64,000 nucleotides of DNA from Orbicella franksi (GCA_964199315.1 OZ116700.1:28706001-28770000), one strand, 5' to 3'. Shown: positions 18,010 through 63,164, counted from the first letter of the stretch. Program-made: numbers and translations. Notes: generated by a model from the letters alone, not told the origin.

Positions 18010-18275
18010 TTTTTCAAGGAGGGGGGAAGGTGGCTCGTACCTTGGGGTAGCAGAATCAATGGGACATGCTCCCAAAATGGTGCAATTTGAGACTTGGAAC
18101 CTAATAGAAAACCGTTTCACTAGAAATGCTAGAAATCACAATAAGGTACATGTCCAGAGAGTTTGCTTTTATTCAAGCCATAACATTCACAACCTTTCTC
18201 AACTTTTTTTTTATGTTTTGTTTCTCCAAAAGGGAATGGCTAGCCACCCAATCCGCCCCCTAAAGCCCCCCCTGG
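18010..18275. mobile_element. MITE-like element overlapping the 3' end of receptor copy A
   Basis: G-rich and C-rich ends (GGAGGGGGGAAGGTGGCT...; ...TAGCCACCCAATCCGCCCCCTAAAGCCCCCCCTG) with a partial inverted match. It has no counterpart in copy B. Confidence 0.5.
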
Positions 18276-21200
18276 TATTGTACTTACTTGTTAATAGACT
18301 ACGCGCATGTAGCTCATGCACTGTGCAGTCAGGATACGAAAGTTCAAACTGGTCTGTTTGTATGCCTTTGTCGCATCTTTCCTTTCTGTACTGGGCGTTT
18401 TGGCAGTGGTCCTCCTTGGCCACTACTCCTTGTTGACCTGTTTTAAGTATGGTATCAATAGCACCACTGTCTTGCACGGCGCCGGTGACAGTAGGCGTGT
18501 CCATTTGTCCTGTTTCCAGCTGTTCATTGACGACGTTACTTTCAGCCAAACCGTGCATTTCGTCTTGCAAATCGTTAAGAGGCAGAAGCAAAGCCAGACA
18601 GCAGGATAAAGAGCAGTGCGGATTTTTGCGCCATTCCGTGAGGTAACGATAGAGGATCAGTGTGTACTGAACTGAAAGCAAATGAGAAATAGAGACAGGT
18701 TTTCCATTACTCCCAGCAAAATAGTTTTAAAACTCTTTTTAAACAGCTAAAATAGTTCGTCTTCTGTGATTGGCGCGGTGATGATACTCAGTCAAGGGAT
18801 TGGTGACTAGTATTTCGACAACCTGGCCGGAAGTGATCACTGTCTCAGTCAAGTGAAAAAAAAAAAAAAAGTGAAAAGCTGTTTGTAAGTCGATGGTCCT
18901 TGGAATCGATATTTCAGATTTGCCCTGGTTATATTGGCCTCAAGACTCGCAAATAGTCAGCACTAGTCAGTTGATGTCAGTTTCGAAAACTCTATCGAAT
19001 CAAGTCAATGTCGTTCTGGATTAATTGAGGTCAGCGTTTTTTGCGTGGAATTTTTGAGGATGAATGTATTGTTTGTAAGGCTCTGGTAGATTCTAGAACC
19101 GGTTTTAACAGAGTTTTGAATGTATGGTTTTGTTCCCAACTTGAGTCTTGTAATCAATACCTTAAGACTTTGTTCTAAGTTTATTAATAATTCAAATACT
19201 TGAATGAATCCAATTGCAATTTTGAAAACGTTTTCACTCGTATATACTCCTTTCTTTGGCCATCGTAGCTTAACAAGAAATAACACGCTGGCGACTGCGG
19301 TGATAAACATGACGATAAAACGCAATGATGGAAAACAATTTTTTTGGTTTTCAATTATTGCGTTTTATTGTCATGTTTATCAACGCAGTTTGTGTTTCAT
19401 TTCTCGTATTTGAAATGATCATTGGGATCTCGACGCTGCTACAACCCAATGATTCATGTGTGATCCGTTTAGATGTGTTAATTCATTAAATTACAATATT
19501 CAGAGGGGAAGCGGCTTGAGCCTTAGCTGGTTTTCATGCGGGTCGTCTATCCTGGTCGAATTGGAGTTTGGTCAATGTTGGTTTTTCAGGACGGAGGAAA
19601 ACCGGGGAACCCGGAGAAAAACCCTCGGAGCAAGGCTAGAACCAACAACAAACTCAACCCACATATGACACCGGGGCGGATTCGAACCTGGGCTATCCCT
19701 GCTCCACGCATTAATAATAACAGGAGTATCCTACCAACAAGAAGGCCAATCACCGAAACGTTTGCTCCAAGTACCAGTATCCTGAATAGGACTGCGTCTG
19801 CGTATTGCTCGCCTGAGCTAAGTGTGTTCTCTGCTGGGATTCTACTGACAGCTCCAACAGCTAAGTTGACAATAGTAACGGCAAGAGATGTGGACATCAA
19901 TCTGTTCTCGAACGCGTCTTGCATGGGACGGATCCAGGAGAACAGCATTCCATACATCCCGGCGATAACCAGTGTTAAGCCAATGTAAGATCTGCTCTCT
20001 TGTCCCACCAGAATCAGAGCGGAGGTTAAGATCACTTTACGAGACATTTCAACAGGTTCCCAGTACCACGAGCGAGGTTTGTAGTTTTCAAAAAGAAAAC
20101 GCAATCCTGTGATCATTTCCATGCTGGGGCCTGGCTTATGGCAACTTTCTGCACCTTTTGAAGCAAACAGTACCCTTCTTTGTCTCCACAGAGCGACGAA
20201 TGAGGCTGCAGGAAGAGCAATGACATAGACAGCGGCTATGTACGCCCCCATGAGTAAATACTGGTACTTTGAACCTTGACATTTTGTCATGTAATCTGCC
20301 TTCAGGTACCTATGACAAAACACTTCGTTTCCATCTCGGCAAAGGTCTTGGCAAGCAAGAGGCAGAACAGCGGCTGTCTTAGAACACGTGCTCAGGTACG
20401 TCACGTAGAGGACGAAAAACAAGTTTTTATACACCAGCTCTTTTGTCTGTGATATCCTTCTCGACTTTTCTTTGACTTCCAAGATTCGGCTTTTCAAGAT
20501 GAGCGCTTTTCTTATTCCGTAATAGATGCCAGACAAGCAAATAACCGCAGCGTTTATTGCCATCATCGCAAATAAGCTTCCAAATGCATCGAGCTGTAGG
20601 CCTGTGAAAAGGCATTGAATGGGTGCAATCTGAAGTATGTTCAACTGTAATACTCCCGAATACTTAGCGATACCCTCCAAGGAATCTGGCCACTTAATGT
20701 ACGAGAATACCTCAAGTAAGCCGTAAGTAACCTGATAAAAGCCAATTACGATTTTGAGTTTGGAGAAAAACATGTCTATGAGTGGCAGTTCTCTGGCCTT
20801 CTTATCTTTTCGTTTGTTTGTCCAAGCCAATAATGCGATGATTATGAATAAAATGACAGTGATGATCGACAACTGCGCCACAATCCACTTCTTTGATGGA
20901 CATTTTGTGCAGATCTGTAACTGCTTATAACATCCTGAGCTGCACACCGCACAAAGTGGACCTTCGTAACCAATCTCACATGGGGAATCCAAACCACCCT
21001 TGCAAGATCCCTCAACCGGGCATTTGTAAGGCGTAGGTATCGGATGAGGAAATCGTACGCTGAAAACATCCAATGCTGGTGAAGATGACAACATATTTGC
21101 AATAAAAAATCTGTAACGCTCTTTATGTGTCTCATTTCGCCATTCCCACCAGTGACCAGATTTCAAAGAAGCATAATCGTCTTTGCATTCCAGTCCTCCT

Positions 21201-24200
21201 TGTCCACATTTGTAACATTTATCGAACATATCCGTTCGATAAAATTCTTCCAAACATTGACAAGCACGGTATCCGGCGAAAAAGTCAGTTTCAGTGCCTA
21301 GAAAGATTCAAAATAACTAGTTTTTGAATGGCATAGTTTTATCATATTACGTCAAAGTTCATATACACACAAGGTGAATGCATCCTATGCTTTCAAAATT
21401 GTAAAATCGTATCCACTAAATATATACATAGTAAACGCAATTTTTGTACCAAAAGTGAAAATTATTTTTTCTTATCAAAGTCATGGACACCTGGGATCTC
21501 GTTGGGGGAGTCAAAGATTTTATTTTTATTTTAGTAGGCACTATGTTTATTTAATTACAAAAGATGGTATTTTAATTTGTATCTAAATACTAGGTGTCCC
21601 CAATAAGAAGAGGGGTGAAATATTAGCTATGATGTCTATAGTCATCTAAAGTTGTTTCTTTATATTTGTATAGGCACATGTAACAAGGCTGTTGATCAAA
21701 ATCCAACATGCTAAAGTAATTATAAAGAAAGTTTCTGATTACAATAAGAAAACAACAAGCTAGTTCAGGGTCACCTAGTGGACAAGCTCTGCAATCCTGA
21801 GTTCTCGTTCCTGGTGTTTTGTCATATGGCACGAATGAACCATTAGGACACTTCTTACAGTTTGTGGCCACGTAACCGACATCGTCAGAATAAAACCCTC
21901 CTGGAAAAATATTGTAACAAAATACAGTTTGATGCGAGACAAAAACCAGCCTTGAGTGCTGTTGTGATATTCTTGGGTTATAGGGTAGGTTTTGGTTCGT
22001 TTTGTCGTGTTAGATGGTACGAAGCCAAAACTGGACTGAATTTCGTTCATTCCCAATATTCCTTCTCCCCTGGTATTTACTTTCTAAAATATTAAAATCC
22101 ACACCTGCCTCGTTATACTTTTAGTGCTGCTGTGCACTTGACATCAATATCAAGCATGACTGAAGCCGGCCATGAACTTATTAGAAATTCAAGGAATTTA
22201 GCTATAAGTAACTGTCAAAGCCCTCGAAAGGAAGGCAAAAGGATAAAATCGTTTTTGCTAACCATATAGGCCGAATCTAGGGACTAGATCATGCGCCAGA
22301 GTTCTGTTGGCGGGATACATGCATAATCAGAGAGTGATAATCTTGCAGTGAAACTCTCACATACCTGGAGGGCATTGTATACATCCTTCAGCTCCTTTAG
22401 AGGAAAAGTTGGAGAATGTTCCCACAGGACACGGTAGAAATGTGTAAGAATACGAGTCATTGTTAGGTATTCCTTTGAATCCAGCGGCCGCTAGAGCGGG
22501 TTTCAAAAACAGGCTTTCCTTCCAATGAGCTTCGACTGCTTCTTTATTGGAATTCAGAGGATTCCTGGAAAAAGAATTCACAGCAAAAACAAAAAGAAAA
22601 CAAAAAGAATATATTCCATTGAAATTACAGTTATTTCTATTTCTTAATCAAATGAAAAGTTATTTAAAGACAAAACATTCGTACAGAACTAAATTGACAT
22701 AACCTTAATCTACTTGCATTACTCTACATTGCTCTACTTATCACATAACTGTACTTATTGCATGGACCTACTTATTTCTTACAGAACATCACTCGTAAAT
22801 AAGTTACTCTCCATTTTGTCCTTACATTTCTACTTGTTATTTACTTTGTTTTCCTCGGTTACCAGCTATTTACAATTAACGTACACTAACTTTTTTTAAA
22901 ATTGCTTAAGTTATCTACACCTAGCTAGGAATACTTACACTATAAAAACAAACTGTAATTAACTATACAATGTGCCCTACATTTCATTCATTGCAAATTT
23001 CTGCTGGTGACCAATTGTCAAATAGCTTTGGCAACTAAGGAATCGTGATACCAAGGCGGTGGCTTAGGTATACATGTATATCAATACTAGCGATGTTTCT
23101 TTAATATTCTAGTTGGCGGACTCACTGGTGCATATTAATGAAGGGACGGTACTTGACAGTGAAATAATGAAATTGATTAATTCCAAGAGACGATGGATGA
23201 TCGTTTCTTGTTAATTCTTGTTAAAATAATTGTATCAATACTTGAGAAGGGCCCATTTTTCATGATATAAATTAAAAAGGTTACAGTTATGAATTAAGAC
23301 CATGCACGGAGGTCGCTGAAGCACCTAGAACTCAAGATGCATTTGATGACAAGGAGGTAATCCGAAATTTAGTTAAGTTGATTAGATTAATCAATTATTG
23401 ATCATTAATTGTGTAATTGGTGGAGTATCGCCCCATTGTTCTTAGAACTAGATACATTACAGTTGTAAATCAAGACCACGAAGGCCGTTGAAAGACTCCA
23501 GATTTAATATCTTTAGCTTCGTCCGCAGTAAGTATCTGGAAAAAAAGAAAAATATGTTGCACGTAAAAATAAATTCAAGGAACAAATAATTTCAAAGAAG
23601 TCTCTGTTAAACAGTAAGTTTAGTATTTATAATTTATTATTTTTTCGAATTGAATATGCTTGTAATCCGTTTTGTTTTGCGACCATACAATGTACCGTAC
23701 GAATTTAAAGATATCTCGTATTCGATATTCCTTCGACACACTGTAAAAAAATTCGAAACTGTTTGCATGTAAAAACTGTAAGACTGGCACTACAAAATAA
23801 TACACCAGCCTCATTGATTGTACGCCATATTGGATTTCATAAACCCAGAAAAGAGGTTTGGCTGTAGAAAACCAAACGAATATTCACCGAAGTTGTTACT
23901 TACATTTTTAAACTGTTAACACCTCGTGTGAATGCTCCTGGTTGGATTGTCTTAATAGGATTGTCCGATAGTATTCTTAAAAGTTGACATCAACAATATA
24001 AAGATATAGTTAGAAAGCCAAATTTATCAATAGTTAGCAATTACGCTAAGGTCCCGACTTGTCTAAGGCCCAGCAGTTGTCTGGATGCGATAAGCTGGTT
24101 AATGCTTTTACCTAGTGGTTTCTTTTTAGTACGCTTTGGTGGGCATATCAGGAGAGTTTAGCCAATTAAGCTTGGTATTGTGACGAGTCGTAGTCGAGCC

Positions 24201-27200
24201 AACAATATCCAAGTCGCACCCAGAGGGTATTATATGGGTGCGTTCCCTTTGGGGTGATCTGGATCAGGATCAGTGATCCAAGATCACTCGGATCATAGTG
24301 CATCAAAGAAACCGACGAATCCGTGATCAGAGTGGATTCATCGGTTCCTTTGATGCACCATGATCCGAGTGATCTTAGATCACTGATCCTGATCCAGATC
24401 ACCCCAAAGGAACGCACCCTATATCAGGTATTTGTATTAAGCCAAATTCGGCTAGAAATATAATCCGGCTACGTCAGGTCTGTGGCATGATATTGCAGGA
24501 TATAAGGCCAGTATATATGGCTTCTGATTGGCTAAGGGTGAATTTGAATATGTTAATCATAAAAAACAGGGGAAAATAACCCAATTATATTTTCAATATA
24601 AATGGACACGTCAAAGGATGGCCGTCAGGAATGTAGGATTTACTTTAAGTAAATAACTTTCTTCTCTTGAAGGGTTAAAATTGCTGTCGATTATCGAACA
24701 ATAAACTGTTAGGAAAGAAAACCACTGAGATTCGCGGATTCTCATTAGGACACTTTAAATATCAATGGATTAAAAAAAAAATTGTTCCGCACTTCACAAA
24801 GAAAAACGTGCAAATTACGATATGTTCTAGTACATACAGATTTTTAAGAAAGACGCTGTCCACAATGGTATCATTTGGTATAGCTGTGATCTTGTTATTG
24901 TGCAGAAATCTAACAATCAATTTATGGACTAAGTATCTCTCAAATAAAGTACTACTGCATATAAGTGTAATTGACGAGGGGTGAGCTCCTATTGGTTATT
25001 AACTAGGCGTGCGGTAAAGATGGCTGGAATATATGGGCCAAGTTCTTCTTTTGCGTGTTTATGGACCGCGATATGGTATCATAAAAACTAGCAGATAAAC
25101 TGCATCTTTGAATGAAATTTTTTTAGTTCTGTTCTTTAAGTTTTGGTTCACGGTATTAGTAAATTTAATCCAAGAATAAACATTCCTCACCAAATTTCCA
25201 ATCAAATTGTATTTTCCTTTCAAACAATTTAAAGAGTTGCCTAGGAGTGTAGGGTATTTGTCGATTGATAAATTTTCCACAAAGAGACTTTTTACCTCAA
25301 AAGAGCAGCTATATACTTTGAATTTGGTGGGCGGATAGAGTACAAAAACAGTTTTCACGGGAATAGATTTGCAGGAGCTCTTGCTCATCTTATTTCTGTA
25401 AGGAGTATCCATAGTTGCAATACTAGGTTTTCCAGGAGAAATTCTTACGCCCTCCCAAAAACTCGAACTAATTATGGCAGCTTCAATATAAGATTTCAAG
25501 GTCCTAAAATCTGGAATGATATCAATGATGATGATGAGCTTTTACCTCTCAGTCAATTTAAAACTTAGTTAAAAGAATTGTTTCCTTTCAAAATTACTAT
25601 TTTTTTTTTATCTTATTATTAGATTGATTATTTCTGACTCCTGGCTTGTTTGTCTGTGATGCTGTGTGTGCGTGAATGTGTGTGTTTTTGTCTGTTTGCA
25701 TTTATTTTTCACCTGACCTTAATAATAATCCCTTATGAACTTGATTATGGCTGCCCTGCTATTTTAGCCCTCGTAGTTATTAAGGGTAGCCAGTACTCTA
25801 TTTTTAATCAGATGAAATTTAAACTGAACTTTGTATTTATATGGGTACAAATAAAATGAAATTGTGGTTGGCCCGTTTGAAAATGAGTTTTTTTTTCGAA
25901 GTTGTCGAAAACGTTAAACTAGGATCTTAATTCAAAAAATTGCAATTTCGGAGATACTCACACAATTTGTACATTTTTCAAACAGGAAAGCAGGCCCTTT
26001 GGTAAATGTTGAAGTTTGTTGAAGGAAAGATCTCTGCAGATAAAAAGTATTGTAGATGAATAATTTGGCTTTTATAAGTACTATCACTGATTATATTGTC
26101 TCTGAATTTTCTCGAAATTTGAATGCTGGTTAATTGGCTTAAGCATCAGTAAGAAATGGCTTTATAGGGTAACGGTTATATAGTAAGACTTTTTAATAAT
26201 CAGAAATCGAAAAAATTCTTTTGATCTCTGAATTTCTTTACTGAGTAGAGAGACAAAGGAAGACAAACAGAGGGAAAAATCGAAAGAGAAAGAAGGAAAG
26301 AAAGAAAGAGAAACGAAAGAAGAGAGAAACGAAAGAATCAATAAAAGCAGGAAAAAATAAGGAATAAATGAAGGAGGAAAGGAAGAAAATAAAAAGAAAT
26401 TAAGAGGAAATCCGATAGGAAATCGAGCGAAAGACAGAAATCTTGTACCAGAATAATGTCACGTATATTAAAATCCTTTTTGTATTTTCTAAAAGCTAAA
26501 GCTATGAGAAATTGCCTGAAGGAACACCAAAAACAATTTTTCATATGAACTCGAGAAAATATATTTCAAAGTTCAGAGAAATTGTGGAAACACAGGCAAA
26601 ATTTCATCATCAGTGTCATTTCACCAGTACTTTCAAGTGTTTCATATGAACTTCAAAATGTGTTTTCGACATTTAATTTGGTGTTGTTAGTAGTGATTTC
26701 TTTTGAGAAGATATTTAAAACAGTCGCACAGAAGTTTGCGCTTTGATGCAAGTAATCTTAGTACAAAGTTTTTTTTCCTCTTGTTACTCGAACTTCAGGT
26801 GGATATCATTAAACTTACAGATACATCAGTACTTTTAGAGGGTAAAACACATCGCCTGTTAAGTTATGAATATTGTTTGAATCCAGTTGCCTGTAATAGG
26901 AAAGTAGAGCTTTAAAATCAACATTTAGGACTTACAGAAATTTAATGTTTAAAAAGCAAAGTTGTATTTTATTGATTGATGGCTCCTGTTGCAGTTTGCA
27001 CGAATGAAAGTTCGCAAGATGAGACCAGAAAACATGCAAGCTTAAGACTGTACTAACAGTGAGCTGATGATAACTTACAGATATTTCAGTCTTGTCAATC
27101 TTGCAAAAATTCCGTCAGGCAGAAATTCAATAGCGTTAGACGTCAATATTCTGTGTAGTGTATTAAGCGATGAAAAAATGATTTATTTATTTTTGGTTAA

Positions 27201-37191: not shown

Positions 37192-37222
<31 letters not shown>

Positions 37223-40030: not shown

Positions 40031-40342
40031 ATGGCTACACACGGCACACCTACACCCCGCGTTTTAGTTCTGGGCATTCGTTTATTCTACGTTAACGTGA
40101 TTTCATTGAACGTAACCCTGGGGATTTAGATTTAACGTTTAAAATAACGGAACCAGCTGCCATAAGTTGGCCTTGTGTTGGAGGGGGTACAGTGGCGAAG
40201 ACTATCCGACATGATCTGCATGCCGTGCAATCTGTCCGCCCTGACATTGTTATCGTGCAACTTGGCACCAATGATTTATCGTTCCACCCTCATTTGCAAG
40301 TGGGTTCTGATCTTGAGGACTTCGTCCGCTTGCTGCACGATT
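40031..40342 (+). pseudogene. Broken SGNH/GDSL esterase-like ORF, probably retroelement-derived
   Basis: MATHGTPTPRVLVLG(frameshift)HSFILR*RDFIE...VGGGTVAKTIRHDLHAVQSVRPDIVIVQLGTNDL shows SGNH block I (G-H-S), block II (G) and block III (GxND). It is truncated by a MITE-like sequence near 40350. Confidence 0.6.
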
Positions 40343-53300: not shown

Positions 53301-56300
53301 AATCCTCCCATTGCCAGTTCATAATTGGTTGGTAATGATGGAAACTCTTCTTTCCAAGGCCAGGTTACTTGGTAACGTCCGCCTTCAAAGTGGATCGTTT
53401 CGTTAAATTTTGCAGAGATTTGTCATCGTCATTTTCTTGCACAGACTCTCTAATGCCCAGGGTCTCAAGTTTCCAAACCTCTTCAAGGTGTGTCTTTTGT
53501 TCAGCTAATGGTTGCTGGTCATCTGACTGAGCACTCAGATGTACACTGATAGGACTGGATTTGTAGGTCAGCATTGAGATGGAGCTGTCTGGTTTGTCAT
53601 CCTGACACTTCACTCTGCCTGTTAGGATCCATCCCAACTTGGATTCTATGAGGTCTAATCCTGGACTGATTACTTTCATTGAAATGTCACCAGAGGAAAT
53701 ATCACAGTAATAATCATTTCCTAGCAACAGTTCCATGTTGGCAGTTTCTTTAGTTGAGGGTACTGAATCGGCAAGAGGAATGTCCTTAAGTAAGTGACTA
53801 AATTTCTCCGGGTTGAGGTATGCTCGTTGTAGGTTACCAGTTATCTTGGGTACAACATTAAACATTAAATGCAGAGATGATCCATCTTTTGTTAACAGCC
53901 AGAGTTCAGTGACAGTCGTGTGAAGCTCTCTGGGTTTTGATGCACTGAATGTGTACACTGTCAGTGTTTCTGATCCTGTGATTGGCAACTGGAGTTTCTC
54001 TGCTAGCTCATTGGTGATGTAGGTCCTTTGGCTGCCTGTGTGTAGAAGCAATCTGGTGGTCACTTTTCTTGATTTTTGCAAATTTTCTACTTCAATGGTG
54101 GCAGTTTGCATCAGTACTTGTTTATCAGAGGACAGCAAGGTATGTTCTGTAGCAACAGTAGCAGATAAGGGTTCAGTAGCAGAATGTGCCATTTCTGAGG
54201 GCTTCTTAACTGGAAACTTCTTGATGCAGAGACTTCCGTGGTGACGATTTCTTTGTTTGCAGTAAACACACGCCTTCTTCACTGTACAGTTTTTCTGGTG
54301 GTGACCTTGTTTGAGACAAATAAAACAGTGTCCCTTGATCTTTTCTTTCCTAGCTGTCACAGTAGGGAACTTTTGACACTCATCACTCCAGTGTTGTCCA
54401 CTGCAACAAATGCAAATCGTATTCTTTCTTCCAGTGAGATTCTGCGGTAGTTTGGTTTCAGACAGTAATGCACCAGTATTAGTGTTAGAATCAAACTGGG
54501 TGACCTGTGTTGTAGACCACATGTTTCCAACCGAGCCTTTGTAATCAAATTTGTCAGAACTTTGCCTATCTGCATTTTCCCTGTTACTAATGTACCTATG
54601 CAACTGATCTCTGAGTAGCCGTACTGTCCATTCGTCACCATCATTTTTTCTGGTCAGTCAGGTGGATGAGAATATCTTGGGTAACTTAACCATTATCAGG
54701 GACACTAGCATTTTACTCTCAATATCCCCTCCAAGAGCTTCTAGTGATCTAAGGTGTTCTTCAATGAGATCATAGTTCTTGCGTAGGGCTGATGTTTGAC
54801 TTGAGGAGGCAGGTAAATCCATAAGACTAGAATAACGAACATTGATGATGACCACATTTTGTCCATAACGTTCGTTCGACAATTTTATGGACTGTTCGTA
54901 ATTTGCATTAGTCAAGGATTGTCCTGAGATAACATCTGCAGCATCTCCTTCTAGCTGAGATCTGAGGTAATTAATTTTCTCTACTGGACTGAGAGATGGA
55001 TTAGAATGTATGGCTGAGTTAAAGGAATCCCAGAATTCCTGCCATTCCTACCTTGTTTAGTGTCAACTTCTAATTTCTAACTCAGTTTCTCTTGCTCCCA
55101 GGGTAAGTCGCTCTGCCTCAATTTTTAATTTTCGGTGCTCAATTTCGGCCTTCTGCTTTTCGATCTCCAACATCTTCTGTTCGAGTTCAAAGTTCACCTT
55201 ACTTGTCCCTCGTTGTGACTTGAATTCCATTCGATCCTTTATCATGGCCATTTTTGAGCTCAATCCTACCACGACTTCTTCTGCTTGCAAAACAAGGTTA
55301 ACATATTCTTCATAACCTTTCATCACCTTGTCGTGTGCTTTCCCAGTGATTTTTGCAGCGGCTTCAAGTTGTCCGCGAAGGCTTTGATAAACAGTTAAAT
55401 GCTGCTGTAGGCGGTCTCGCTTGTCACGGGTTTCGTCCAAAAGTTGTTCTAAATCACCATCGATGGGACGTTCCTTCATTTCTTTTGCTGCCTCAAGGTT
55501 CATAGTTACATGCCTTTTCCTTGGGTCAATAAGTCTTCTTATGTCACCCAAGTCTGTCATCTTGTCGGCGGGGTCGGTTCAATTCATGGCTGCTGTTGTT
55601 GATTTCGTCGAGCGAGCGAATTCGTAATTTTGTCTTTTTCTTTGTTGACGGTTCTTCTCCGGTTTAAAACAGGCTGTCCTCCACGGAAGATTAAAGTCGG
55701 CGTTTCGGCAGTGGATTTAGCCGCTCTGCTACCATGTCGCGAACGCGATTTTCTTTATTTACTAGGACAACGACTGATTTAACATGGAGGAAAAGATTCT
55801 CGCTTCGGGCATATGCTCCGCAGGAGTGGTTACTAAGCCTATAGTCTCTTGGAGTGGTCGCTAGGCCCTCCGCGACAAACTTAGCCTATGAACAATCGCA
55901 TTGCTTTTATGTGATACATGCGTCATTCATTCCTTTGATAGAATGTGTTCTAAAGATGTGAAAAACCATTGTCTCTCAATAGATTACCATGGGTCGGTCG
56001 ACGGGTCGAAGGATGATGGAAAACTGCTTACGAGTATGACATTAATTTTACAAGAAGTATTTTTCACCCACTTCGCTGACGTTATATTTAAAAATGAGGC
56101 CTTATCCATCAAGTTTGCAATTGATCTATCGATATTCTCGAAACCCTTGCTTTCTCTTACATACTCACATAAATAGTATGTTCGTCAAAGAAGAGAACAA
56201 GCCCTGCGGTAAATATTGAATCTTGTTGAAGGAAAGATCCCTGTGAAATTAAAAATCTCTCATTACATCTCTTCTCTTGGTGTCCTCTGTTGCTCATGGA

Positions 56301-59300
56301 ATTTCTTATACATTATAGGAATGGGTTTTGTGGGATAAGATTATATCCTCATGCTCTAAAGTGTACATGAGATATTCTTTCTTGATGGAATCTACTTGAG
56401 ACATGACATGGAAATGGAACATTTATTATAAATTAATAATAATAATAATAATAACGATAATGATAATGATAATAATAATAATAAATTATTTAATCTTGAT
56501 TCCTCTATGGTGTAATTTCTTGATTTCTTGTTTTGTGTTAGATTCCTACATAATTTTCTTTTTTACAGAATTCAAGTTTAACAATAAGCAGGTTTTGAAA
56601 AACTTAAGTACAAGATGGTCTATGCCAGATGGTATATGAAAGAAATGCCCCACACTTACAGAAAACTAAGCTTTTTCAGAGCAGAAAAGACATCGCCAGT
56701 AAGGTTTTGAATATTGTTTGATTCCAGTTTTCTGTAAAGCAATCATGGTATTTTCTTTCAGAAAAACAAAATTGAGAAAATTTCGTGTTTGCGTTTTCCA
56801 TGCTAAGTTGAACTTTCTTCTAATCAGTAAACTCCGTTACATTCTCTACCAAAATGTTTCACCAGAGACAAGTGATATTGTACATTCCTGACTAATTTAT
56901 GTGTATGTATGCTAGCGAATGGGCGTTATTATCTATATTTAGGTAGTCTTGGTTCCTACAGGAGATTAACCACTGGTAAAAAAATCAAACAGAACACCTA
57001 TTTGAATTGCAATAAAAAGATTGCAGTACATGTCTAAAGCATAATATAGTTTATATGCCACAGTTTTTGACACCAAATCGCCTTGGAACGATATCCTGAG
57101 TAAGTAAAATGTGGTATTATATGTTCATGTCCTTACCAAAAACATCTTTCGGGTAACGTTCGGATACCTTAGATCGCCAAAATCTTTGGGCAAGTTTCAC
57201 TAATCCTTGAAGATCGTCGTAGATCTTCGTAAATCTTTGGGCTATTGTTGGAATTCGTTTTGGCCTTCTGATCAGCCTTGGTAATCTCCGGAATTCTGTA
57301 GGTGTTGTTCGACTGTATCCTTATCAGGGAACTGTTACAGTACAATCTCAACTTCACGAATAGATATTATGATTAAATTGACATCACTGATACTTACTAA
57401 AAGTTACCATACTTCCAATATCGCATCGTTTAATTGATGGCATTTATTTTGTTGCTTAGGGCAGACACATCGTCACCCGCGCTTAACATGTAAACAACTG
57501 ATGAGGAAATAGATTAAACTTTGGGTTTTGTGTTAGATAAACAGTGTAAATAAACAGTGTAATTCCTTCAACGTATGAAGACTTCTTAGCAAACGGTAAG
57601 TTTAAAGTAGCTAAGTTTATAGCTAGTAACAATTCGTACTGTGTACAGGGTAATTTCACTCACAGTATTTGCAGCCTTGTCAGTTTAGCAAACGCTCCGG
57701 CAGGTAGAAACTCAATTGCATTTGAAACCAATTCACTGAAAAAAAGGTTCTATGGTTTGTCAATGATCGTTTTCGTCCATCTCGAAAAAAAGAGAAGCTA
57801 CCTTCAGACGTAAATATCCTTTTACAGTTGGACGTTGCTATGTTACTTTAATGTTTTGTGTTCTCTAAGCTATCTTTGGAAATTTCTTGTTAAGAAAATT
57901 GCTCTTTAGCTAACCCTTTCGTTCTTGCAACACACATACATACACTTTATGTTAACTCGAATTATCAGAGTAGCTCTATTAAGCTAATATCTTCGAGAAA
58001 GAAAAATTCATAAATCAATTAAAGTATTACAATACATAATTAGAACGCTAAAAATACTAAAAGTTAATTTTCTTCATGGCTATCTTAAGCTCTTTTAGTG
58101 ATGTATTGTTCTCATACTGCTTCTAATAATTCCGTATTGGTTCCTGCTGATTTTCGAAAACAGTTCACTTACAGACGGAACATCTGCCTTCTCAGTGTAG
58201 CAAACAAGACTTCAGGTAAAGCTCTAATTGCATTGTAGGACAAATCTCTAGAAAGGAGAATTTTAAGAAACTTCTCAAACTCATGAATAACTCATCAAGT
58301 TTGATTTCATGAATAAACATCTCAAACTCATGATTAATTTATCAAGTTTAAACAAAAGAAATCATGCCCGTGACGGTGTTTGGATATCTGATGTCAATTA
58401 GCGTAGATTTTTACGATATTATACCTCCGTTTTCTCCTTAGTTTTAGTTTTTACGGAGAAGATGTATCAAATACCCATCCACACACCCAGGAGTTCGTCA
58501 AAAATACCCCGCTACGCATCGTATTTTCAACTCTCTTCTTCGTGTTTGGAAATACGGTCAAACACGGTCTTTCGTGTTTACCTCAACAACAATGAAAAAA
58601 TTATGAATTAAACAACACGACACGCTTGTTCTTTCTCGTTTAGTTGCGAAGTAGATGAGCAATTTTACCTTTTTCAGTGACAAATCGCATCCACCCCAAG
58701 GCAAGCACAATTTTGTTCCCTTTGAAGAAATAAGCCCTTGCTAAATGATTCCAAATCCCAATAAAAATTTCGGCTGAAAGCGATTCATTTGGGATGTAAT
58801 TTTGAACCCATCAGTTCACTTTAAAATGCATTTTTCTTAGATACTTTGTTATTTCTACATTCTCAAAAATAATTATGTCGATTCTACATTCAAAATAGCC
58901 ATCGCAAAGCTGGGGTAGTTTATTCAAACTATTCATTGTTTCTTCTACCGGCTATGAGATGCAACATTGAGTGTTAAAAGGGGGTTAAACTTAGCTGGTT
59001 AAAATTTAAACTGCCATCTTAGAAATGAAACCAATGGCTAAGATCTGTAAAACCTACTGATACACTTGGCTATTATGAGCCTCAGTAGCCTGTCAGTGAA
59101 GCTGACATTTTGAGTGTCAGCCCTTCTACAGAACAAAGTTTGCTTTGAGGAAGGAAAAATGCTTTGACGAAGTGTTAGCACTCGAAACGTAGGCTTTACC
59201 AACCCACCATGGTAGTTAATTTACCTATATTAACTTCTGGTAGATAAATAGCAGTGTTACCGCAGCCCAACAGCTTCTTTAATAAACTCATACCTTTGTT

Positions 59301-62300
59301 TAAAAATTACTGATAAATGATCAATGAGCTTATTTCTTTATTGTTAAATGAGATTCCATCACGCTCGTCCAAATCCTTGATACTGGAAAAGTAAAATGAC
59401 TGCAGGAATCATTACTTTTATTCGAGTAACTGGGCTTTAGCTGTTGTATACTTACAGAGTATTTAGAAGTGTCAGGTTGTTAAACACTCCATCAGGAAGA
59501 AACTGGATATTGTTGTTATTCAAAACACTGTCAAATAATAAAACTCGATAAGTAAAAACCAAAGCCAGCCGTTTAAGTAAGGGACTCATTGTTAATATGC
59601 CATTGTGCGGGAAACACCCCATTCAGTAATTAATGGTAACAGGTTTTTCTTTTCTTTAAAATAATCTCTGGTCCGTGTTATAGTAAAACCTAAACCATAC
59701 AGTTGGCTTTATCCTAATAAGGATCTCAACAGAGTAATTTTGCCTTGAATTGGAAACGTATTGAATACATTGAGTAACGATAATGACGGTCAGTAAAGGA
59801 GATGTGTTCAACAGTCAGCTAGTTTGCCAATACTGGCAAATGCCGCCTGAAAACAGAATGCACAGTGTAAAGAAACGAGTGTAGGAAATACACTAGGGAA
59901 TGCAAAAGAGATCGCACTAACACCGTACAAGGGAATGTACAAGGAAACCCATTAGGGAACACAGAAGGAAAGGCCTGGAAAGCAAAGAAGAAATACGGGA
60001 GAACGGGGGCGTTGTAAGCGATATCTTGATGTCTATGCACTTACAGAGATAGTAGCATTTTTTGTGAGGCAAACACTTTGCCAGGTAGATATTTAATAGC
60101 GTTTTCAGATAAATGCCTGTGGAAGGGAAACAACTGATGTTATAAAACGGGCCCATTCACTGGTATTTTTATTAACAAGACACGTTATTGCGCTAACCCA
60201 GACTTTTTTCTTTTCAAATCAGTCAATAGAAAAAGTATTTCTCATATATGACTAAAGTTAAAATGCCGTTTTTTTGGCTTTGTTCAACTGTATTAAACCA
60301 GTGGTATCTACGTACCAAAAACCAGTTGCTCAGAGCTACCTCACGGTTTGCTCATCTTGAAAAGTTTAGCCTAAATTTTTTAATTTCATCGTTTGTAATC
60401 CATATTAATCTTCTCCATCCTTAACGTACTCTTCTCTTTATGGTTTATTATTATCTCTTTGGCTCTTTTCTATCTTAGTAAGCTACTATTTTCAGGTTTT
60501 CTCCATTTATAGGCAATTTCGTACGTGGCTAAAATAACTCAAAATATCGTGACTGAGCTTCTTTAAGGAATGGACAACCTTATCAGGGCACCAGATAAGC
60601 CATAATCTCCCCTGAAAAATGTGACGAGGCGGGTGTGGGTAATACAATTATAACAGTTTCATCGACAACAGTGATTCACTTACAGCGTTCGCAGATTGCT
60701 CAGAGAAGAGAATACTGCTTCAGGAAGAAACGTTAAAGCGTTCGAGTCCAAATACCTGGGATGCATTTTATAAGTAAATGCTAATGGAGTAACAATTGCT
60801 TGCGATTAAGTAAAGAGATGCATTGTGAAACGCCAAATCTTAAATAAGTGAGAGGGCTGGGTGTGCGTTGTTATAGCCGACTTAAAATTAGTGAGAGAGA
60901 AAAACAAATGGATAAGTGATTTCATTAAACGTTAACCGATCTAGCCGTTGATGAGGCAGAGATAATTATTCTAAAGATGAATCAAAGGGATCCTAGGTAA
61001 ATTAATCTTTCGGGGCATACCATGAAAACGAGGTTAATTTTTGAGGTTTTGTCTATGTTTCATTTTTATTATGCTTATTTATATGACATTAAATTATATT
61101 ATATCATACTANNNNNNNNNNNNNNNNNNNNNNNNNNNNNNNNNNNNNNNNNNNNNNNNNNNNNNNNNNNNNNNNNNNNNNNNNNNNNNNNNNNNNNNNN
61201 NNNNNNNNNNNNNNNNNNNNNNNNNNNNNNNNNNNNNNNNNATCGAAAATGCGACGGTACGGTACCGTAAAGCCAAGTAACAGAAGTACAATATTGGGAC
61301 TTACAACCATTTCAGTTTTCTCACGGTGGCAAACACTCCATCGGGAAGGAATTCAATAGCGTTTGAGGAGAATCTTCTGTAAAAAACAATTCAAATAGAA
61401 CTGAAACTATTAATCAAATTTAAGTACTGCATTCGGTAGACTCAGGTCAGCGTTTCTAGGATTTTTAATTAATAGTTTAACACATACTGCAGTAGGTAGA
61501 AGGATTGTGTTGACAGGCGAAATTCCACGTTAGGAGTGAATTGTGACTATTGTCAATGTGCCCTTGTGGTTGATAGACTTTGGATACCACCAAAAACTTT
61601 TCAACTTGTTTGAATAGGGACACTGAAAACTATTTGTTCCCTATCTATTAGGTCTTGTGTCGAGGAGAAGTCTGTTAACTTACATCTCTCGCAGGTTGGC
61701 CAGCTTGGAGAAAACTTCATTGGGTAGAAATCTTATAGCATTTGATGATAAGCTCCTGTGAGAATGTGACATTTATTTTGGTAAGGAAAGCTTTGAAACC
61801 TTCCGTAAAAATTCAAATTATAACAAATCGTTTTTGCGCTAGCAAGCAAAACGTATTTTTACAGTACATTGTTTGAGTGGCGTTGTATCACTAGTATTAC
61901 TTTCGGTTATTACATAATTGCCTTTAAGGAGCTGTGCTATGCTTATACAGATTCAAATTCAGATTCAGATTTTTACTGTTTTGCACTATTTACAAAAAAT
62001 ATAACTTTAACAGTATTTATAGAAATGACATTGATCATTAAGAGAAAAGAAATATAATAGTAAATAGCCAAAATGAACTGTGCTCAGTAACCAAAGTAGC
62101 ATAGGCTTTCGTGTTTGTCACCGGACACGTACAAACAATTGACACGATATATCAATTATATTAATATCAAAAAAGTACAAAAGGAAACGATATATATATA
62201 TATGAAAATAAACGCGTAAAAGGATGGCAGAACGTAGATAAGCTATATGCCGAATATAAGCAGGCTATACAGAAGAGTAGGATTGATTGTTTAAAAGGAA

Positions 62301-63164
62301 TAGTTTATATTTGTTGTAAAAGGAAGTGTAAGGCAGTTTTTTAAAGTTTATTGGAATAGTTTCCCAAAGTTTAGATGAAACAAAAGCGAAAGTAGAGGTC
62401 CTACAGTTATTATTTGCTTTTGGCCTGTGAAAATTTAATTTGGAAGCAAATCTGGTATTGTGGGTATGTATACGTAAAAAGCTTGAATTAGTTCCGTTTC
62501 CAGACTAATGAGCCGTTTCAATTTTAAAAAAAGTTTTTAAATCACGCATAAAATCAAGCGGTTTTTCAACTGATGAAGGCTTAAGAGTTAGCCGAAACGT
62601 CTTGCTAAAATATACAAGTCAGTGACAAAAAACGGCACTTTCATCGATTGAGCCTGTAGTGTAATGAGGTAGAGTTATAAGTGAGTGAGCTTTGAAACCA
62701 AACTTTAACTGTTCATTAAACTCTCGGAGATACTATATATTTCAACACAACGACACAACGTTTTAGCTTTTGGTTATCTGTTTAAGGACGCAAGAAGTTA
62801 CCTTATAACGGCTAGAATCGTATATAGCGTTTTCACGTAACATCATCAAACCTGGGCATTTTGAGTAATGGCGGCGCGTGACATATAGTTACGATCACGT
62901 TTGTTAAAAAAAATACACGTTTATCTCGTAATTTTTAGCCGTTTGAGAAGTTAAAGTGGGAGAAAAAATGTTCTGATAGTGTTTGTTTGTGAAGTACAGT
63001 TAATCGGTGGCCTAGATAACCAAAGTAAGGTCTAGATATTTACTAAATTTTCCGGCCGCCATTTTGAATGACCAAGGACACATTTCACTTACAGAAGTCG
63101 CAGATCTGTCAGGTTGTCAAACATTTCAGCATACAGGAATGCAATCGCATTTGAGGACAAGTCC
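41378..63164 (-). CDS. Receptor copy B (5'-incomplete): at least 12xLRR-Cys-rich-multipass membrane protein, tandem paralogue of copy A
   Basis: GT-AG exons in frame: LRR 63164-63093, 61755-61684, 61376-61305, 60755-60684, 60116-60045, 59527-59456, 58247-58173, 57735-57664, 56731-56660, 47860-47789, 47327-47256 and 47013-46939, then 45466-45267, 44933-44808, 43825-42263 (1563 nt, the same size as in copy A) and 41748-41378. Exon sizes and phases mirror copy A. The N-terminal exons lie beyond the window. Confidence 0.88.
43920..44151. repeat. (AGTAAC)n microsatellite running into an assembly gap
   Basis: Direct reading. It produces the artefactual poly-SN, poly-TV and poly-L ORFs. Confidence 0.95.
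44152..44310. other. Assembly gap (N run)
   Basis: 159 N bases. Confidence 1.
44311..44665 (-). mobile_element. 3' fragment of a LINE (C-terminal Cys motif and 3' UTR)
   Basis: IEHQQHFLMYCRGCTSLRRELH...IIGKYIHLMF resembles the E-x-x-H-F-L-x-x-C-x-x-Y-x-x-L-R C-terminal motif of non-LTR ORF2 proteins. Confidence 0.55.
46075..46260. repeat. Compound tetranucleotide microsatellite (GAAA)n-(GAAC)n-(GAAT)n
   Basis: Direct reading. Confidence 0.9.
47380..47560. repeat. Cryptic GACT/GTGT low-complexity minisatellite
   Basis: Recurrent TGACTG/TGTG units in an intron of copy B. Confidence 0.6.
48036..48178 (-). repeat. 3' LTR of the BEL/Pao element
   Basis: It differs from the 5' LTR at 10 of 143 positions by manual count. 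On the minus strand it is preceded by the purine tract GGCTGGGGAG. AATAAA lies at 48060-48055. Confidence 0.92.
51374..53109. repeat. Insertion of about 1.7 kb with 380-400 bp tandem units inside the BEL RT
   Basis: It splits KLRI|(VY)DASAK. The anchor TATTTTAAT(G/A)TTTTGGTTTCAAAAAGAAG recurs at 51417, 51798 and 52204, with degenerate copies near 52360 and 52640. Confidence 0.8.
55735..55877 (-). repeat. 5' LTR of the BEL/Pao element
   Basis: TGTCGCG...CGCGACA termini. On the minus strand it is followed by a PBS TGGTAGCAGAG (55734-55724), complementary to the 3' end of animal initiator tRNA-Met (...CTCTGCTACCA). AATAAA lies at 55759-55754. Confidence 0.92.
56430..56490. repeat. (ATA/ATG)n microsatellite
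   Basis: Direct reading. Confidence 0.85.
60331..60565. mobile_element. MITE-like element in an LRR intron of copy B
   Basis: Imperfect inverted ends AGAGCTACCTCACG / CGTGACTGAGCTTCT. A recalled coral repeat family, not verified. Confidence 0.5.
61112..61241. other. Assembly gap (N run)
   Basis: 130 N bases inside an LRR intron of copy B. An additional LRR exon could be hidden here. Confidence 1.
61945..62510 (-). mobile_element. 3' fragment of a CR1/L2-like LINE with (TCTGAA)n tail
   Basis: The minus frame reads IHTHNTRFASKLNFHRPKANNNCRTSTFAFVSSKLWETIP...FYNKYKLFLL*. The UTR ends in an ATCTGAATCTGAATTTGAATCTG tail. Confidence 0.6.

What the first reader, a model, noticed from the sequence alone, without database searches (positions are those of the whole stretch)
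18211..63164. Tandem family of CUB-Ig-LRR-Cys-rich receptors on a ~9-10-pass membrane domain that is not a recognisable GPCR
Seen in sequence: two head-to-tail paralogues with matching exon sizes. Copy A assembles without stops into SP-CUB-Ig-LRRNT-13 LRR-CPxG repeats-C..GYEGPLCAVC..G.YKQ..C..C, then a membrane region and a cytoplasmic tail. I count 9-10 hydrophobic segments, not 7, and see no rhodopsin (DRY/NPxxY) or adhesion-GPCR GPS motif and no TIR domain. The hallmark motifs are FLFENYKPRSWYWE(L/P)VEMSRKVIL and RPMQDAFENRL. From memory these resemble the fungal Flc/Pkd2 TRP-like (Pfam PF06011) and protist Cys-rich multipass families. Inference: an animal-type recognition ectodomain is fused to a channel/transporter-like module. 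This could be an expanded ligand-sensing receptor-channel family, for example in microbe/symbiont or self/non-self recognition, that standard annotation would call uncharacterised or mislabel as LGR-like.
Basis: partly seen in the sequence, partly recalled or inferred. Interest (0 to 1): 0.88.

Follow-up and report, generated by a model that had tools for sequence, protein, structure and literature searches.

The report
Coral CUB-Ig-LRR receptors on 9-TM module
Two neighbouring stony-coral genes encode cell-surface proteins whose CUB-Ig-LRR recognition head sits on a nine-helix membrane domain related to fungal Flc/Pkd2 calcium-channel-like proteins rather than to GPCRs. They belong to a very large family that databases list but nobody has studied in animals.

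Summary
Both genes are on the minus strand.

- **Copy A** assembles from 24 exons with canonical splice sites into a 1366-aa open frame: signal peptide, CUB, Ig, LRRNT-like cap, 14 one-LRR exons, ephrin-receptor-like Cys modules, DUF7630, nine TM helices and a cytoplasmic tail.
- RNA contigs confirm the last four junctions. They also show that the CDS ends at 17741, not 18211.
- **Copy B** has the same exon sizes and an intact frame, but it runs off the window. Both N gaps and a BEL/Pao retrotransposon lie in its introns.
- **Membrane domain:** the AlphaFold model (pLDDT 87) matches no solved structure and no GPCR. It matches predicted models of a Dictyostelium LRR protein (DDB_G0281931), SadA, yeast Flc1-3 and S. 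pombe Pkd2. Eleven of 47 aligned relatives hit Pfam PF06011.

The architecture is not new to databases. Co-linear CUB-Ig-LRR-DUF7630 proteins are annotated as "uncharacterized", or mislabelled, in Oculina, Stylophora and Montipora. LRR-bearing relatives occur in sea cucumbers, Dictyostelium and a choanoflagellate, and a relative whose domains I did not scan occurs in a sponge.

Channel activity is inferred only. The best hint is that protist relatives carry EF-hands in predicted cytoplasmic loops. The scan had noted the LRR exon array of this same stretch before (s1-207871).

The parts
17741..37337 (-). Copy A gene, CDS span: 24 exons, 1366 aa
   Evidence: All internal junctions are AG/GT and there is no stop. 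It aligns end to end with Oculina proteins P0210, P0203 and P0200 at 52-55% identity.
37241..37337 (-). Exon 1: start codon and a signal-peptide-like hydrophobic stretch (MLFLPLVLVLIW)
   Evidence: Sequence reading. No signal-peptide predictor was available.
35268..35971 (-). CUB domain on two exons (35971-35809 and 35440-35268)
   Evidence: Pfam CUB covers profile positions 9-51 and 56-110, E 3.6e-10 and 5.1e-10, both above the cut-off.
34275..34514 (-). Ig-like exon
   Evidence: Pfam Ig_2 at E 4e-4, below the cut-off. The co-linear Oculina homologues P0187 and P0210 pass Ig_2 at this position.
33532..33649 (-). Cys-containing LRRNT-like cap exon
   Evidence: Sequence reading. There is no Pfam hit.
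23461..32842 (-). Fourteen single-LRR exons (72 bp; two of 75 bp), all phase 2-2
   Evidence: Splice-bounded scan and assembly. An RNA contig stops matching exactly at acceptor 23535.
21775..22564 (-). Two Cys-rich exons (22564-22365 and 21900-21775), ephrin-receptor-like/TNFR-like
   Evidence: Weak Pfam hits. The junctions 22365|21900 and 21775|21297 are seen in RNA contigs.
20900..21025 (-).
   Evidence: Pfam PF24633: copy B scores 30.8 bits, above the cut-off of 27. Copy A scores 19 bits, below it. The module is present in 45 of 47 relatives.
19739..20893 (-). Nine-helix membrane domain of copy A (residues 135-519 of the 1563-bp exon 21297-19735)
   Evidence: AlphaFold2 model, pLDDT 87 and pTM 0.84. 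Foldseek hits to Q54T82, SadA, Flc1-3 and Pkd2.
17741..18671 (-). Cytoplasmic tail exons (18671-18288 and 17763-17741), then the 3'UTR
   Evidence: RNA contigs join 19735|18671 and leave at 18288. The loose end maps to 17763. There is no Pfam hit.
41378..63164 (-). Copy B, the 17 exons present in the window (13 LRR exons, two Cys exons, TM exon, tail). The 5' end is off the window.
   Evidence: Intact 1066-aa frame with the same exon sizes as A. dN/dS 0.11-0.27 against A.
48036..55877 (-). BEL/Pao LTR retrotransposon inside a copy B intron (between LRR exons 56240-56169 and 47860-47789)
   Evidence: Pfam Peptidase_A17, DUF1758, rve and DUF5641. Flanking direct repeats are 93% identical.
44152..44310 (.). 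Assembly gap in a copy B intron, beside a microsatellite
   Evidence: It lies between exons 44933-44808 and 43825-42263. The homologous intron of A (477 nt) holds no exon.
61112..61241 (.). Assembly gap in a copy B intron between two LRR exons
   Evidence: It lies between exons 61376-61305 and 60755-60684, both phase 2-2.

Best explanation
These are two tandem, functional paralogues of a large stony-coral gene family. They encode multi-pass cell-surface receptors.

**Ectodomain.** A metazoan-type head (CUB, Ig, 14 LRRs) is followed by ephrin-receptor-like Cys modules and a DUF7630 module. In the model, DUF7630 packs rigidly onto the extracellular loops of the membrane bundle.

**Membrane domain.** It is a nine-helix bundle, N-terminus outside and C-terminus inside. 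It belongs to the pan-eukaryotic superfamily that holds Dictyostelium DDB_G0281931 and SadA. More distantly, that superfamily holds the fungal PF06011 proteins Flc1-3 and Pkd2.

**What is shown.** The gene structure, the domain order, the fold relationship, purifying selection, transcription of the 3' half, and the family's wide distribution.

**What is inferred.** Ligand binding or mechanical pull on the LRR/CUB/Ig head is passed through the stiff Cys-rich stalk to the nine-helix bundle. The bundle then changes cytosolic signalling. The most likely route is control of Ca2+ entry, as in Pkd2. The alternative is the strictly conserved cytoplasmic motifs (FLxENYKxxxWYWE before TM6 and RPMxxxFE between TM7 and TM8) acting on a partner.
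For: **Gene model**
- 24 exons with canonical splice sites and no stop.
- RNA contigs confirm junctions 22365|21900, 21775|21297, 19735|18671 and 18288|17763.

**Domains**
- CUB, DUF7630, and weak Ig and Ephrin_rec_like hits.

**Fold**
- pLDDT 87, pTM 0.84, nine TM helices. Basic residues cluster in the loops predicted to be cytoplasmic, and a 4-Cys hairpin sits outside.
- Foldseek against AFDB Swiss-Prot: Q54T82 E 3e-12 with TM-score 0.64; SadA 4.5e-5; Flc1/2/3, YOR365C, Flc1 of Cryptococcus and Pkd2 at 2e-4 to 1e-3, aligned over residues about 134-519.
- AFDB clusters: many eukaryotic proteins with this module under different ectodomains.

**Sequence family**
- PF06011 hits in 11 of 47 relatives. 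P0245 passes the cut-off.
- 3641 representatives at E<=1e-3 and 877 clusters at E<=1e-100.
- Co-linear homologues P0187, P0210 and P0250.

**Selection**
- dN/dS 0.11-0.27 between A and B.

**Calcium link**
- EF-hand pairs are inserted in the TM1-TM2 loop (P0369, P0371) or the C-tail (P0372, and P0374 of the choanoflagellate Bicosta minor). Both sites are cytoplasmic in my topology.
- Reconstituted S. pombe Pkd2 lets Ca2+ through on membrane stretch (PMC9727806).
Against: - Neither window protein hits PF06011 itself, even at E 0.1 to 1.
- TM-scores to the Flc/Pkd2 models are only 0.35-0.42.
- No solved structure of this fold exists to show a pore.
- Channel activity in the superfamily rests on one protein, Pkd2. 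SadA is described as an adhesion receptor (PMC2173991). The Flc proteins are linked to flavin transport as well as to calcium (PMC9600462 abstract).
- The splice joining the last LRR exon to the first Cys exon (23461|22564) was not seen. Two RNA contigs run 13 nt into that intron and then differ from the window. So a shorter isoform without the LRR head is not excluded.
- No ligand, cell type or expression condition is known.
Confidence: 0.7

Rival explanations
1. Non-conducting adhesion or recognition receptor. The nine-helix bundle is only an anchor and a docking platform that pairs with a partner subunit, as SadA is described and as the CRMP A/B pair is predicted to do. Signalling or adhesion would then run through the conserved cytoplasmic motifs and the tail, with no ion flux.
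For: - SadA is a nine-TM substrate-adhesion receptor (PMC2173991) and is the second-best Swiss-Prot fold match.
- CRMPs with nine TMs and EGF/ephrin-receptor-like modules act as contact sensors for rhoptry exocytosis and are predicted to dimerise through their TM domains (PMC9815656, PMC9670195).
- The most conserved positions here are cytoplasmic (W412, E413, R419, K420, P457).
- The tail has a conserved Cys cluster.
Against: - Relatives carry EF-hands in cytoplasmic loops, and Pkd2 shows Ca2+ permeability (PMC9727806). Both point to calcium.
- Homology to CRMPs was not shown here (one search found none).
- Nine conserved helices are a lot for a mere anchor.
Confidence: 0.3
2. Transporter rather than receptor. 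The bundle would move a small molecule (flavin or a lipid, as proposed for yeast Flc proteins), and the ectodomain would only target or regulate it.
For: - Flc1-3 are named flavin carrier proteins and match the bundle.
- The Cryptococcus Flc1 paper links the family to flavin transport and calcium homeostasis (PMC9600462, abstract seen).
Against: - A large, fast-diversifying LRR/CUB/Ig head and a family of hundreds of paralogues fit recognition, not housekeeping transport.
- There is no structural match to any known transporter fold.
Confidence: 0.07
3. Gene-model artefact. The CUB-Ig-LRR exons and the Cys-rich/TM exons would be two adjacent genes (a secreted LRR protein and a shorter nine-TM protein) that happen to be in frame.
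For: - The 23461|22564 junction was not seen spliced in RNA contigs, and contigs read into that intron.
- Many database models hold only the Cys-rich and TM part, for example P0002 and P0237.
Against: - Phase and frame are kept over all 24 exons, and the Cys exon has no start codon or signal peptide of its own.
- Copy B keeps the same layout.
- Co-linear full-length models exist in Oculina, Stylophora, Montipora, Holothuria, Dictyostelium and a choanoflagellate.
- The short database models are largely ORF calls on genomic contigs.
Confidence: 0.08

Closest known systems
Dictyostelium discoideum 'putative leucine-rich repeat-containing protein DDB_G0281931' (Q54T82)
   Same: An LRR ectodomain and Cys-rich modules on the same nine-helix bundle. 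It is the best Swiss-Prot fold match (E 3e-12, TM-score 0.64, query residues 12-520). RefSeq names some coral paralogues after it.
   Different: It has no CUB or Ig, shares only 18% identity, comes from an amoebozoan, and is itself uncharacterised.
Dictyostelium SadA, substrate-adhesion receptor
   Same: Nine predicted TM helices behind extracellular Cys-rich (EGF-like) repeats, with the N-terminus outside (PMC2173991). Foldseek E 4.5e-5.
   Different: It has an EGF head instead of CUB-Ig-LRR, 10% identity, and a TM-score of only 0.42. Its function (adhesion, phagocytosis) was shown genetically, not mechanistically.
Fungal PF06011 'TRP-like' proteins: S. cerevisiae Flc1-3 and YOR365C, C. neoformans Flc1, S. 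pombe Pkd2
   Same: The whole TM bundle aligns (query residues about 134-519; E 2e-4 to 1e-3, prob 1.0). Relatives of the window proteins hit the PF06011 profile.
   Different: The N-terminal domains differ and DUF7630 is absent. Identity is 8-15% and TM-scores are 0.30-0.42. The window proteins do not hit PF06011 themselves. Despite the name, this is not the six-TM tetrameric TRP/polycystin fold.
Apicomplexan cysteine repeat modular proteins (CRMPA/B, PfCRMP1-4)
   Same: Per the literature: EGF/ephrin-receptor-like Cys modules directly before nine TM helices, with variable adhesive heads. They sense contact and trigger exocytosis, and Dictyostelium homologues are noted (PMC9815656, PMC9670195). 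RefSeq calls several Oculina paralogues 'cysteine repeat modular protein A-like'.
   Different: Homology was not tested here, because no CRMP sequence could be obtained. The heads differ (Kringle, lectin, MAR).
LRR-containing GPCRs (LGR), adhesion GPCRs and Toll-like receptors
   Same: A large LRR or adhesive ectodomain coupled to a membrane signalling part.
   Different: There are nine helices, not seven or one. There is no 7tm Pfam hit, no DRY or NPxxY, no GAIN/GPS and no TIR.

Membership tests
Pfam PF06011 (TRP; Flc/Pkd2 TRP-like) | Match to the PF06011 profile at or above its gathering score (28.5 bits) | tested here: not met
   Copies A and B give no PF06011 hit at E up to 0.1 to 1. Relatives do: 11 of 47 at E<=0.1, best 8.7e-10. 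Pocillopora P0245 scores 29.2 bits.
Pfam PF06011 (TRP; Flc/Pkd2 TRP-like) | Same multi-helix membrane fold as Flc/Pkd2 | tested here: met
   Foldseek against predicted models of Flc1/2/3, YOR365C, Cryptococcus Flc1 and Pkd2: prob 1.0, E 2e-4 to 1e-3. Alignments cover query residues about 134-519 at TM-scores of 0.35-0.42. Both sides are predictions.
Pfam PF06011 (TRP; Flc/Pkd2 TRP-like) | Ca2+ permeability or a role in Ca2+ homeostasis | not testable with these tools
   Only indirect evidence: EF-hand insertions in relatives and the Pkd2 reconstitution (PMC9727806).
DUF7630 / DDB_G0281931-like Cys-rich nine-TM receptors | DUF7630 (PF24633) module directly before TM1 | tested here: met
   Copy B scores 30.8 bits, above the cut-off of 27. 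Copy A scores 19 bits, below it, at the homologous place. The module is present in 45 of 47 relatives.
DUF7630 / DDB_G0281931-like Cys-rich nine-TM receptors | Nine TM helices, N-terminus out and C-terminus in, with strong sequence and fold similarity over the whole module | tested here: met
   AlphaFold model. phmmer finds 207 representatives at E<=1e-30. Q54T82 at E 3e-12. A Stylophora model at TM-score 0.92.
Apicomplexan CRMP family | Conserved core of two EGF/ephrin-receptor-like modules plus nine TM helices, homologous in sequence | tested here: inconclusive
   The architecture agrees. No CRMP sequence was retrieved. The only link is RefSeq's automatic 'CRMP A-like' name on Oculina paralogues.
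GPCRs (rhodopsin-like, LGR, adhesion) | Seven-TM bundle, 7tm Pfam profile, DRY/NPxxY or GAIN/GPS | tested here: not met
   Nine helices and no 7tm family hit. GPCR chains appear in PDB Foldseek only at E>0.1 with TM-scores of about 0.1. The motifs are absent.
Canonical TRP/polycystin channels (six-TM voltage-gated-like fold) | S1-S6 with a pore loop; PF00520 or PKD_channel profile; structural match to solved TRP/PKD2 | tested here: not met
   There is no such hit for A or B. Ion_trans hits 1 of 47 relatives at 3e-4 only. No TRP or PKD2 chain appears among the PDB matches.
Toll-like receptors | LRR ectodomain, single TM helix, cytoplasmic TIR domain | tested here: not met
   Nine TM helices. 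The tail has no Pfam hit.

The most novel reading that the evidence does not exclude
Corals, and other non-vertebrate animals such as sea cucumbers and perhaps sponges, may carry a very large, overlooked class of ionotropic pattern-recognition receptors. In these, a diversifying LRR/CUB/Ig head would directly gate a Pkd2/Flc-like nine-helix Ca2+-permeable module. Binding of a microbe, symbiont or neighbouring tissue would then be turned straight into a calcium signal, without Toll- or NLR-type adaptors. A related possibility follows the way CRMPs are proposed to trigger rhoptry discharge: contact-triggered exocytosis, such as cnidocyte or mucocyte discharge.
Probability: 0.15. Interest if true: 0.85.

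Novelty: new variant of a known kind. Interest (0 to 1): 0.55.

Why it matters
Studies of cnidarian innate immunity that I know of centre on TLRs, NLRs, lectins and scavenger receptors (from my own knowledge, not checked here). This family places LRR recognition heads on a quite different membrane module.

The family appears to be very large in stony corals:
- 877 sequence clusters at E<=1e-100.
- Dozens of distinct Oculina loci in the hit lists.

None of my nine literature searches returned a paper describing the animal members. The coral members are annotated as uncharacterised or given misleading names.

The work also ties together proteins that are studied separately: fungal Flc/Pkd2, Dictyostelium SadA and possibly apicomplexan CRMPs. 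Together they look like one ancient 'Cys-rich stalk plus nine-TM' receptor chassis that carries interchangeable heads.

If the module conducts calcium, this would be a directly testable new route from surface recognition to signalling. That is relevant to coral-symbiont and coral-pathogen biology.

Tried and rejected
- **GPCR, canonical six-TM TRP/polycystin and TLR readings:** rejected on helix count, Pfam results and fold searches.
- **Sequence search of PDB:** one hit at E 1.6 and nothing better.
- **Foldseek PDB and VIA-align wide:** only generic helical matches. Best E was 0.1 and best Z was 8.2, which is within the background stated for helical models.
- **RNA support for the LRR-to-Cys junction:** the single read-laying run confirmed the 3' junctions but not 23461|22564. 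The polyA raw-read runs X23 and X24 gave only repeat-derived partial matches.
- **Transcript-derived full-length protein of this species:** the near-identical hit P0269 is an ORF call of the big exon only.
- **Link to apicomplexan CRMPs:** I tried a long-protein query (P0146, region 1855-2400). No CRMP was found, but EF-hand-bearing relatives turned up.
- **Literature searches:** nothing on the animal family for DUF7630, DDB_G0281931, 'nine transmembrane' with LRR and coral, or ephrin-receptor-like with cnidarian. The 'SadA' co-occurrence with CRMP was a false match to the author name Sadak.
- **Earlier scan notes:** only the LRR-exon note on this same stretch was found.
- **Third copy in the window:** none.
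- **tRNA or SINE explanation of the RNA depth spike at 19579-19775:** no tRNA was found, and the loose-end motif is absent from the window.

Full report
**What is in the window**

The window looks like stony-coral DNA. The nearest named proteins are from Oculina patagonica, and the RNA and DNA runs that hold the sequence are coral samples. The reported genes lie on the minus strand. ORF listing showed two long paralogous reading frames (19586-21253 and 42201-43757), each followed by a shorter tail frame. A translated comparison of the two halves of the region picked out a co-linear series of short conserved exons.

**Gene model of copy A**

I rebuilt copy A exon by exon. All internal boundaries are AG/GT, the phases are consistent, and there is no stop. 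The order is:
- a first exon with a start codon and a signal-peptide-like hydrophobic stretch;
- CUB split over two exons, with each half above the Pfam cut-off (E 3.6e-10 and 5.1e-10);
- an Ig exon (Ig_2 at E 4e-4, below threshold);
- a Cys-containing LRRNT-like exon;
- fourteen exons of one LRR each (72 bp, two of 75 bp, all phase 2-2);
- two Cys-rich exons with weak Ephrin_rec_like/TNFR hits;
- a 1563-bp exon with DUF7630 and the whole membrane region;
- the tail.

The one-LRR-per-exon layout agrees with an earlier scan note on this same stretch (s1-207871).

**RNA evidence**

Contigs of two coral metatranscriptome runs were laid on 18200-24100. They join 22365|21900, 21775|21297 and 19735|18671 exactly as modelled. 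They also leave the window sequence at 18288. The loose end maps to 17763 behind an AG.

This gives a 24th exon and a stop ending at 17741. The CDS is therefore 1366 aa and extends below the reported start of 18211.

One contig stops matching exactly at the acceptor of the last LRR exon (23535), which is consistent with splicing there. The junction from that exon to the first Cys exon (23461|22564) was not seen. Two contigs run 13 nt into the intron and then differ from the window. So the physical link between the LRR head and the TM exon is not shown by RNA here.

Three other lines support that link:
- The frame and phases are continuous.
- Copy B has the identical layout.
- Copy A aligns end to end with annotated Oculina proteins (P0210 covers residues 35-1304 at 55% identity; P0203 and P0200 at 52-53%). 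Their Pfam architecture is CUB-Ig_2-LRR-Ephrin_rec_like-DUF7630.

**Copy B and the assembly gaps**

Seventeen exons of copy B lie in the window (63164 down to 41378). They give an uninterrupted 1066-aa frame with the same exon sizes as A: 72/75, 200, 126 and 1563. Its first LRR exon in the window matches the fourth of A, so its 5' part should lie beyond position 64000.
- The gap at 44152-44310 sits in the intron before the TM exon, next to a microsatellite. The homologous intron of A holds no exon.
- The gap at 61112-61241 sits between two phase 2-2 LRR exons. A hidden LRR exon there cannot be excluded, and would not break the frame.
- A BEL/Pao LTR retrotransposon of about 7.8 kb occupies another copy B intron. 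It carries Peptidase_A17, DUF1758, integrase and DUF5641, and is flanked by 93%-identical repeats at 48036 and 55735.

Between A and B, dS is 0.65-0.9 and dN/dS is 0.11-0.27 in every part. The LRRs evolve fastest at 0.27. This is an old duplication, with both copies under purifying selection. There is no third copy in the window.

**The membrane domain**

Hydropathy gives nine to ten segments. I aligned 47 homologues (A1) and obtained an AlphaFold2 model of the 520-residue exon with pLDDT 87 and pTM 0.84. The model shows:
- nine TM helices at residues 135-162, 172-196, 237-268, 274-309, 342-381, 412-430, 435-455, 461-485 and 494-519;
- a four-Cys beta-hairpin (315-338) between TM4 and TM5;

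With the ectodomain outside, the Lys/Arg-rich loops (TM1-2, TM3-4, TM5-6 and the start of the tail) fall inside. The Cys-rich hairpin falls outside. The topology is therefore self-consistent: N-terminus out, C-terminus in.

The invariant positions are the ectodomain cysteines plus K181, D334, W412, E413, R419 and P457. Most non-Cys invariants lie at the cytoplasmic face.

**What it is not**

There is no 7tm, Ion_trans, PKD_channel or TIR profile hit for either copy. DRY, NPxxY and GPS patterns are absent from the relevant parts. A sequence search of PDB found nothing. Foldseek against PDB gave nothing better than E 0.1 with TM-scores of about 0.1. VIA-align gave a best Z of 8.2 on generic helical proteins, which is within the stated background. 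So it is neither a GPCR nor a classical TRP/polycystin channel, and the fold has no solved representative that I could find.

**What it is**

phmmer against 1.84 billion representatives found 3641 relatives at E<=1e-3 and 207 at E<=1e-30.

*Named members*
- Corals (Oculina, Porites, Montipora, Acropora, Stylophora, Pocillopora), sea anemones (Actinia, Nematostella) and a jellyfish.
- The sea cucumber Holothuria and the sponge Oscarella.

They are called 'uncharacterized', 'putative leucine-rich repeat-containing protein DDB_G0281931' or 'cysteine repeat modular protein A-like'. Some are mislabelled as Tolloid-like 2, carboxypeptidase N subunit 2, LRRC15 or IGFALS.

*Fold matches*
- Foldseek against AlphaFold models of Swiss-Prot ranks Dictyostelium Q54T82 first (E 3e-12, TM-score 0.64). 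That protein is itself an LRR protein.
- Dictyostelium SadA follows (4.5e-5).
- Then come yeast Flc2, Flc1, YOR365C and Flc3, Cryptococcus Flc1 and S. pombe Pkd2 (2e-4 to 1e-3). These are aligned over the whole bundle.
- AFDB clusters and the ESM Atlas show the same module across eukaryotes under many heads: TIG, Sushi, FN3, laminin-EGF, beta-helix and ephrin-receptor-like. It is often named 'TRP C-terminal domain-containing protein'.

*Pfam*
- DUF7630 is found in 45 of 47 aligned relatives, and PF06011 in 11 of 47 (best E 8.7e-10).
- The CUB-bearing Pocillopora protein P0245 passes the PF06011 gathering score.
- The two window proteins themselves do not reach PF06011. I therefore place them in the wider superfamily, not in the Pfam family as defined.

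**Function**

*Known biology of relatives*
- SadA is a nine-TM substrate-adhesion receptor (PMC2173991).
- Reconstituted S. pombe Pkd2 passes Ca2+ when the membrane is stretched (PMC9727806).
- Flc proteins are linked to calcium homeostasis and flavin transport (PMC9600462).
- Apicomplexan CRMPs have nine TMs behind EGF/ephrin-receptor-like modules. They are proposed host-contact sensors for rhoptry exocytosis and are predicted to pair through their TM domains (PMC9670195, PMC9815656).
- I could not test homology to CRMPs, because no CRMP sequence came into the session.

*EF-hand relatives*

That last search did uncover long relatives with EF-hand pairs.
- In P0369 and P0371 the pair is inserted between the parts that align to TM1 and TM2.
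- In P0372 and P0374 it lies after TM9. P0374 is from the choanoflagellate Bicosta minor.
- Both sites are cytoplasmic in my topology.

This independently supports the topology and ties the module to calcium.

*Best reading*

A surface recognition or adhesion receptor whose stiff Cys-rich stalk couples the head to a nine-helix bundle. The bundle controls a cytosolic signal, most likely Ca2+ entry. A non-conducting, partner-dependent receptor is the main rival.

**Novelty**

However, the architecture is already present in public proteomes, and an LRR head on this module predates animals.

What appears undescribed is the animal branch as a receptor family, its size in corals, and its link to Flc/Pkd2 and SadA. 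I found no paper on it among the open-access texts searched. That library omits most subscription journals.

Noticed in passing
window 48036-55877 (minus): A BEL/Pao-type LTR retrotransposon of about 7.8 kb lies in the same orientation as copy B, inside one of its introns. It has gag-like, DUF1758, Peptidase_A17 and integrase frames, and its reading frames are broken into several pieces. Internal tandem repeats of about 400 bp lie at 51383-52288.
   Followed up: partly
window 19735-20150 versus 42263-42680 (3' third of the big exon): Synonymous divergence between copies A and B drops to 0.40 in residues 382-520, against 0.94 in residues 135-381. This suggests gene conversion over the most conserved cytoplasmic motifs, or very strong constraint there.
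   Followed up: no
window 19579-19775: RNA contig word depth jumps to about 860-1200 here, against about 8 on the neighbouring exon. Many short contigs continue into unrelated sequence. A dispersed, highly transcribed repeat seems to sit in the intron just after donor 19735. No tRNA was found there.
   Followed up: partly
window 22564-22577: Two RNA contigs match through the acceptor at 22564 for 13 intron bases and then diverge from the window. One of them is spliced at the next junction. This could be a retained intron from a divergent allele or species, or an alternative 5' end giving a head-less isoform.
   Followed up: partly
P0369, P0371 (Logan transcripts); P0372; P0374 (Bicosta minor): Relatives of the nine-TM module carry an EF-hand pair, either inserted in the TM1-TM2 loop or after TM9. 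The listed precomputed Pfam domains show other relatives with CAP-Gly (PF01302) or discoidin/F5_F8 type C (PF00754).
   Followed up: partly
window 15747-16928 (minus): A non-LTR retrotransposon reverse-transcriptase fragment (RVT_1, E 3e-20). It may abut or overlap the roughly 0.9-kb 3'UTR of copy A that the RNA contig implies.
   Followed up: no
window 1134-1547 (+), 6636-7070 (+), 40192-40536 (+): Flanking frames: a TPR exon (several TPR profiles pass); a frame that looks like an OTU-type deubiquitinase to me but has no Pfam hit; and, between the two copies, a GDSL-lipase-like fragment just below the cut-off (30.5 against 32.9 bits).
   Followed up: no
window 43848-44345: A long trinucleotide microsatellite, read as (Asn-Ser)n in one frame and (Thr-Val)n on the other strand. 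It flanks the first assembly gap and probably explains why the assembly broke there.
   Followed up: no
Oculina patagonica proteins P0237 and P0303: The two closest Oculina proteins (80% and 78% identity to the copy A TM exon) carry gene numbers only four apart on one 38.5-Mb contig (ACROYT_G022988 and G022992). The tandem arrangement may be conserved between coral genera.
   Followed up: no
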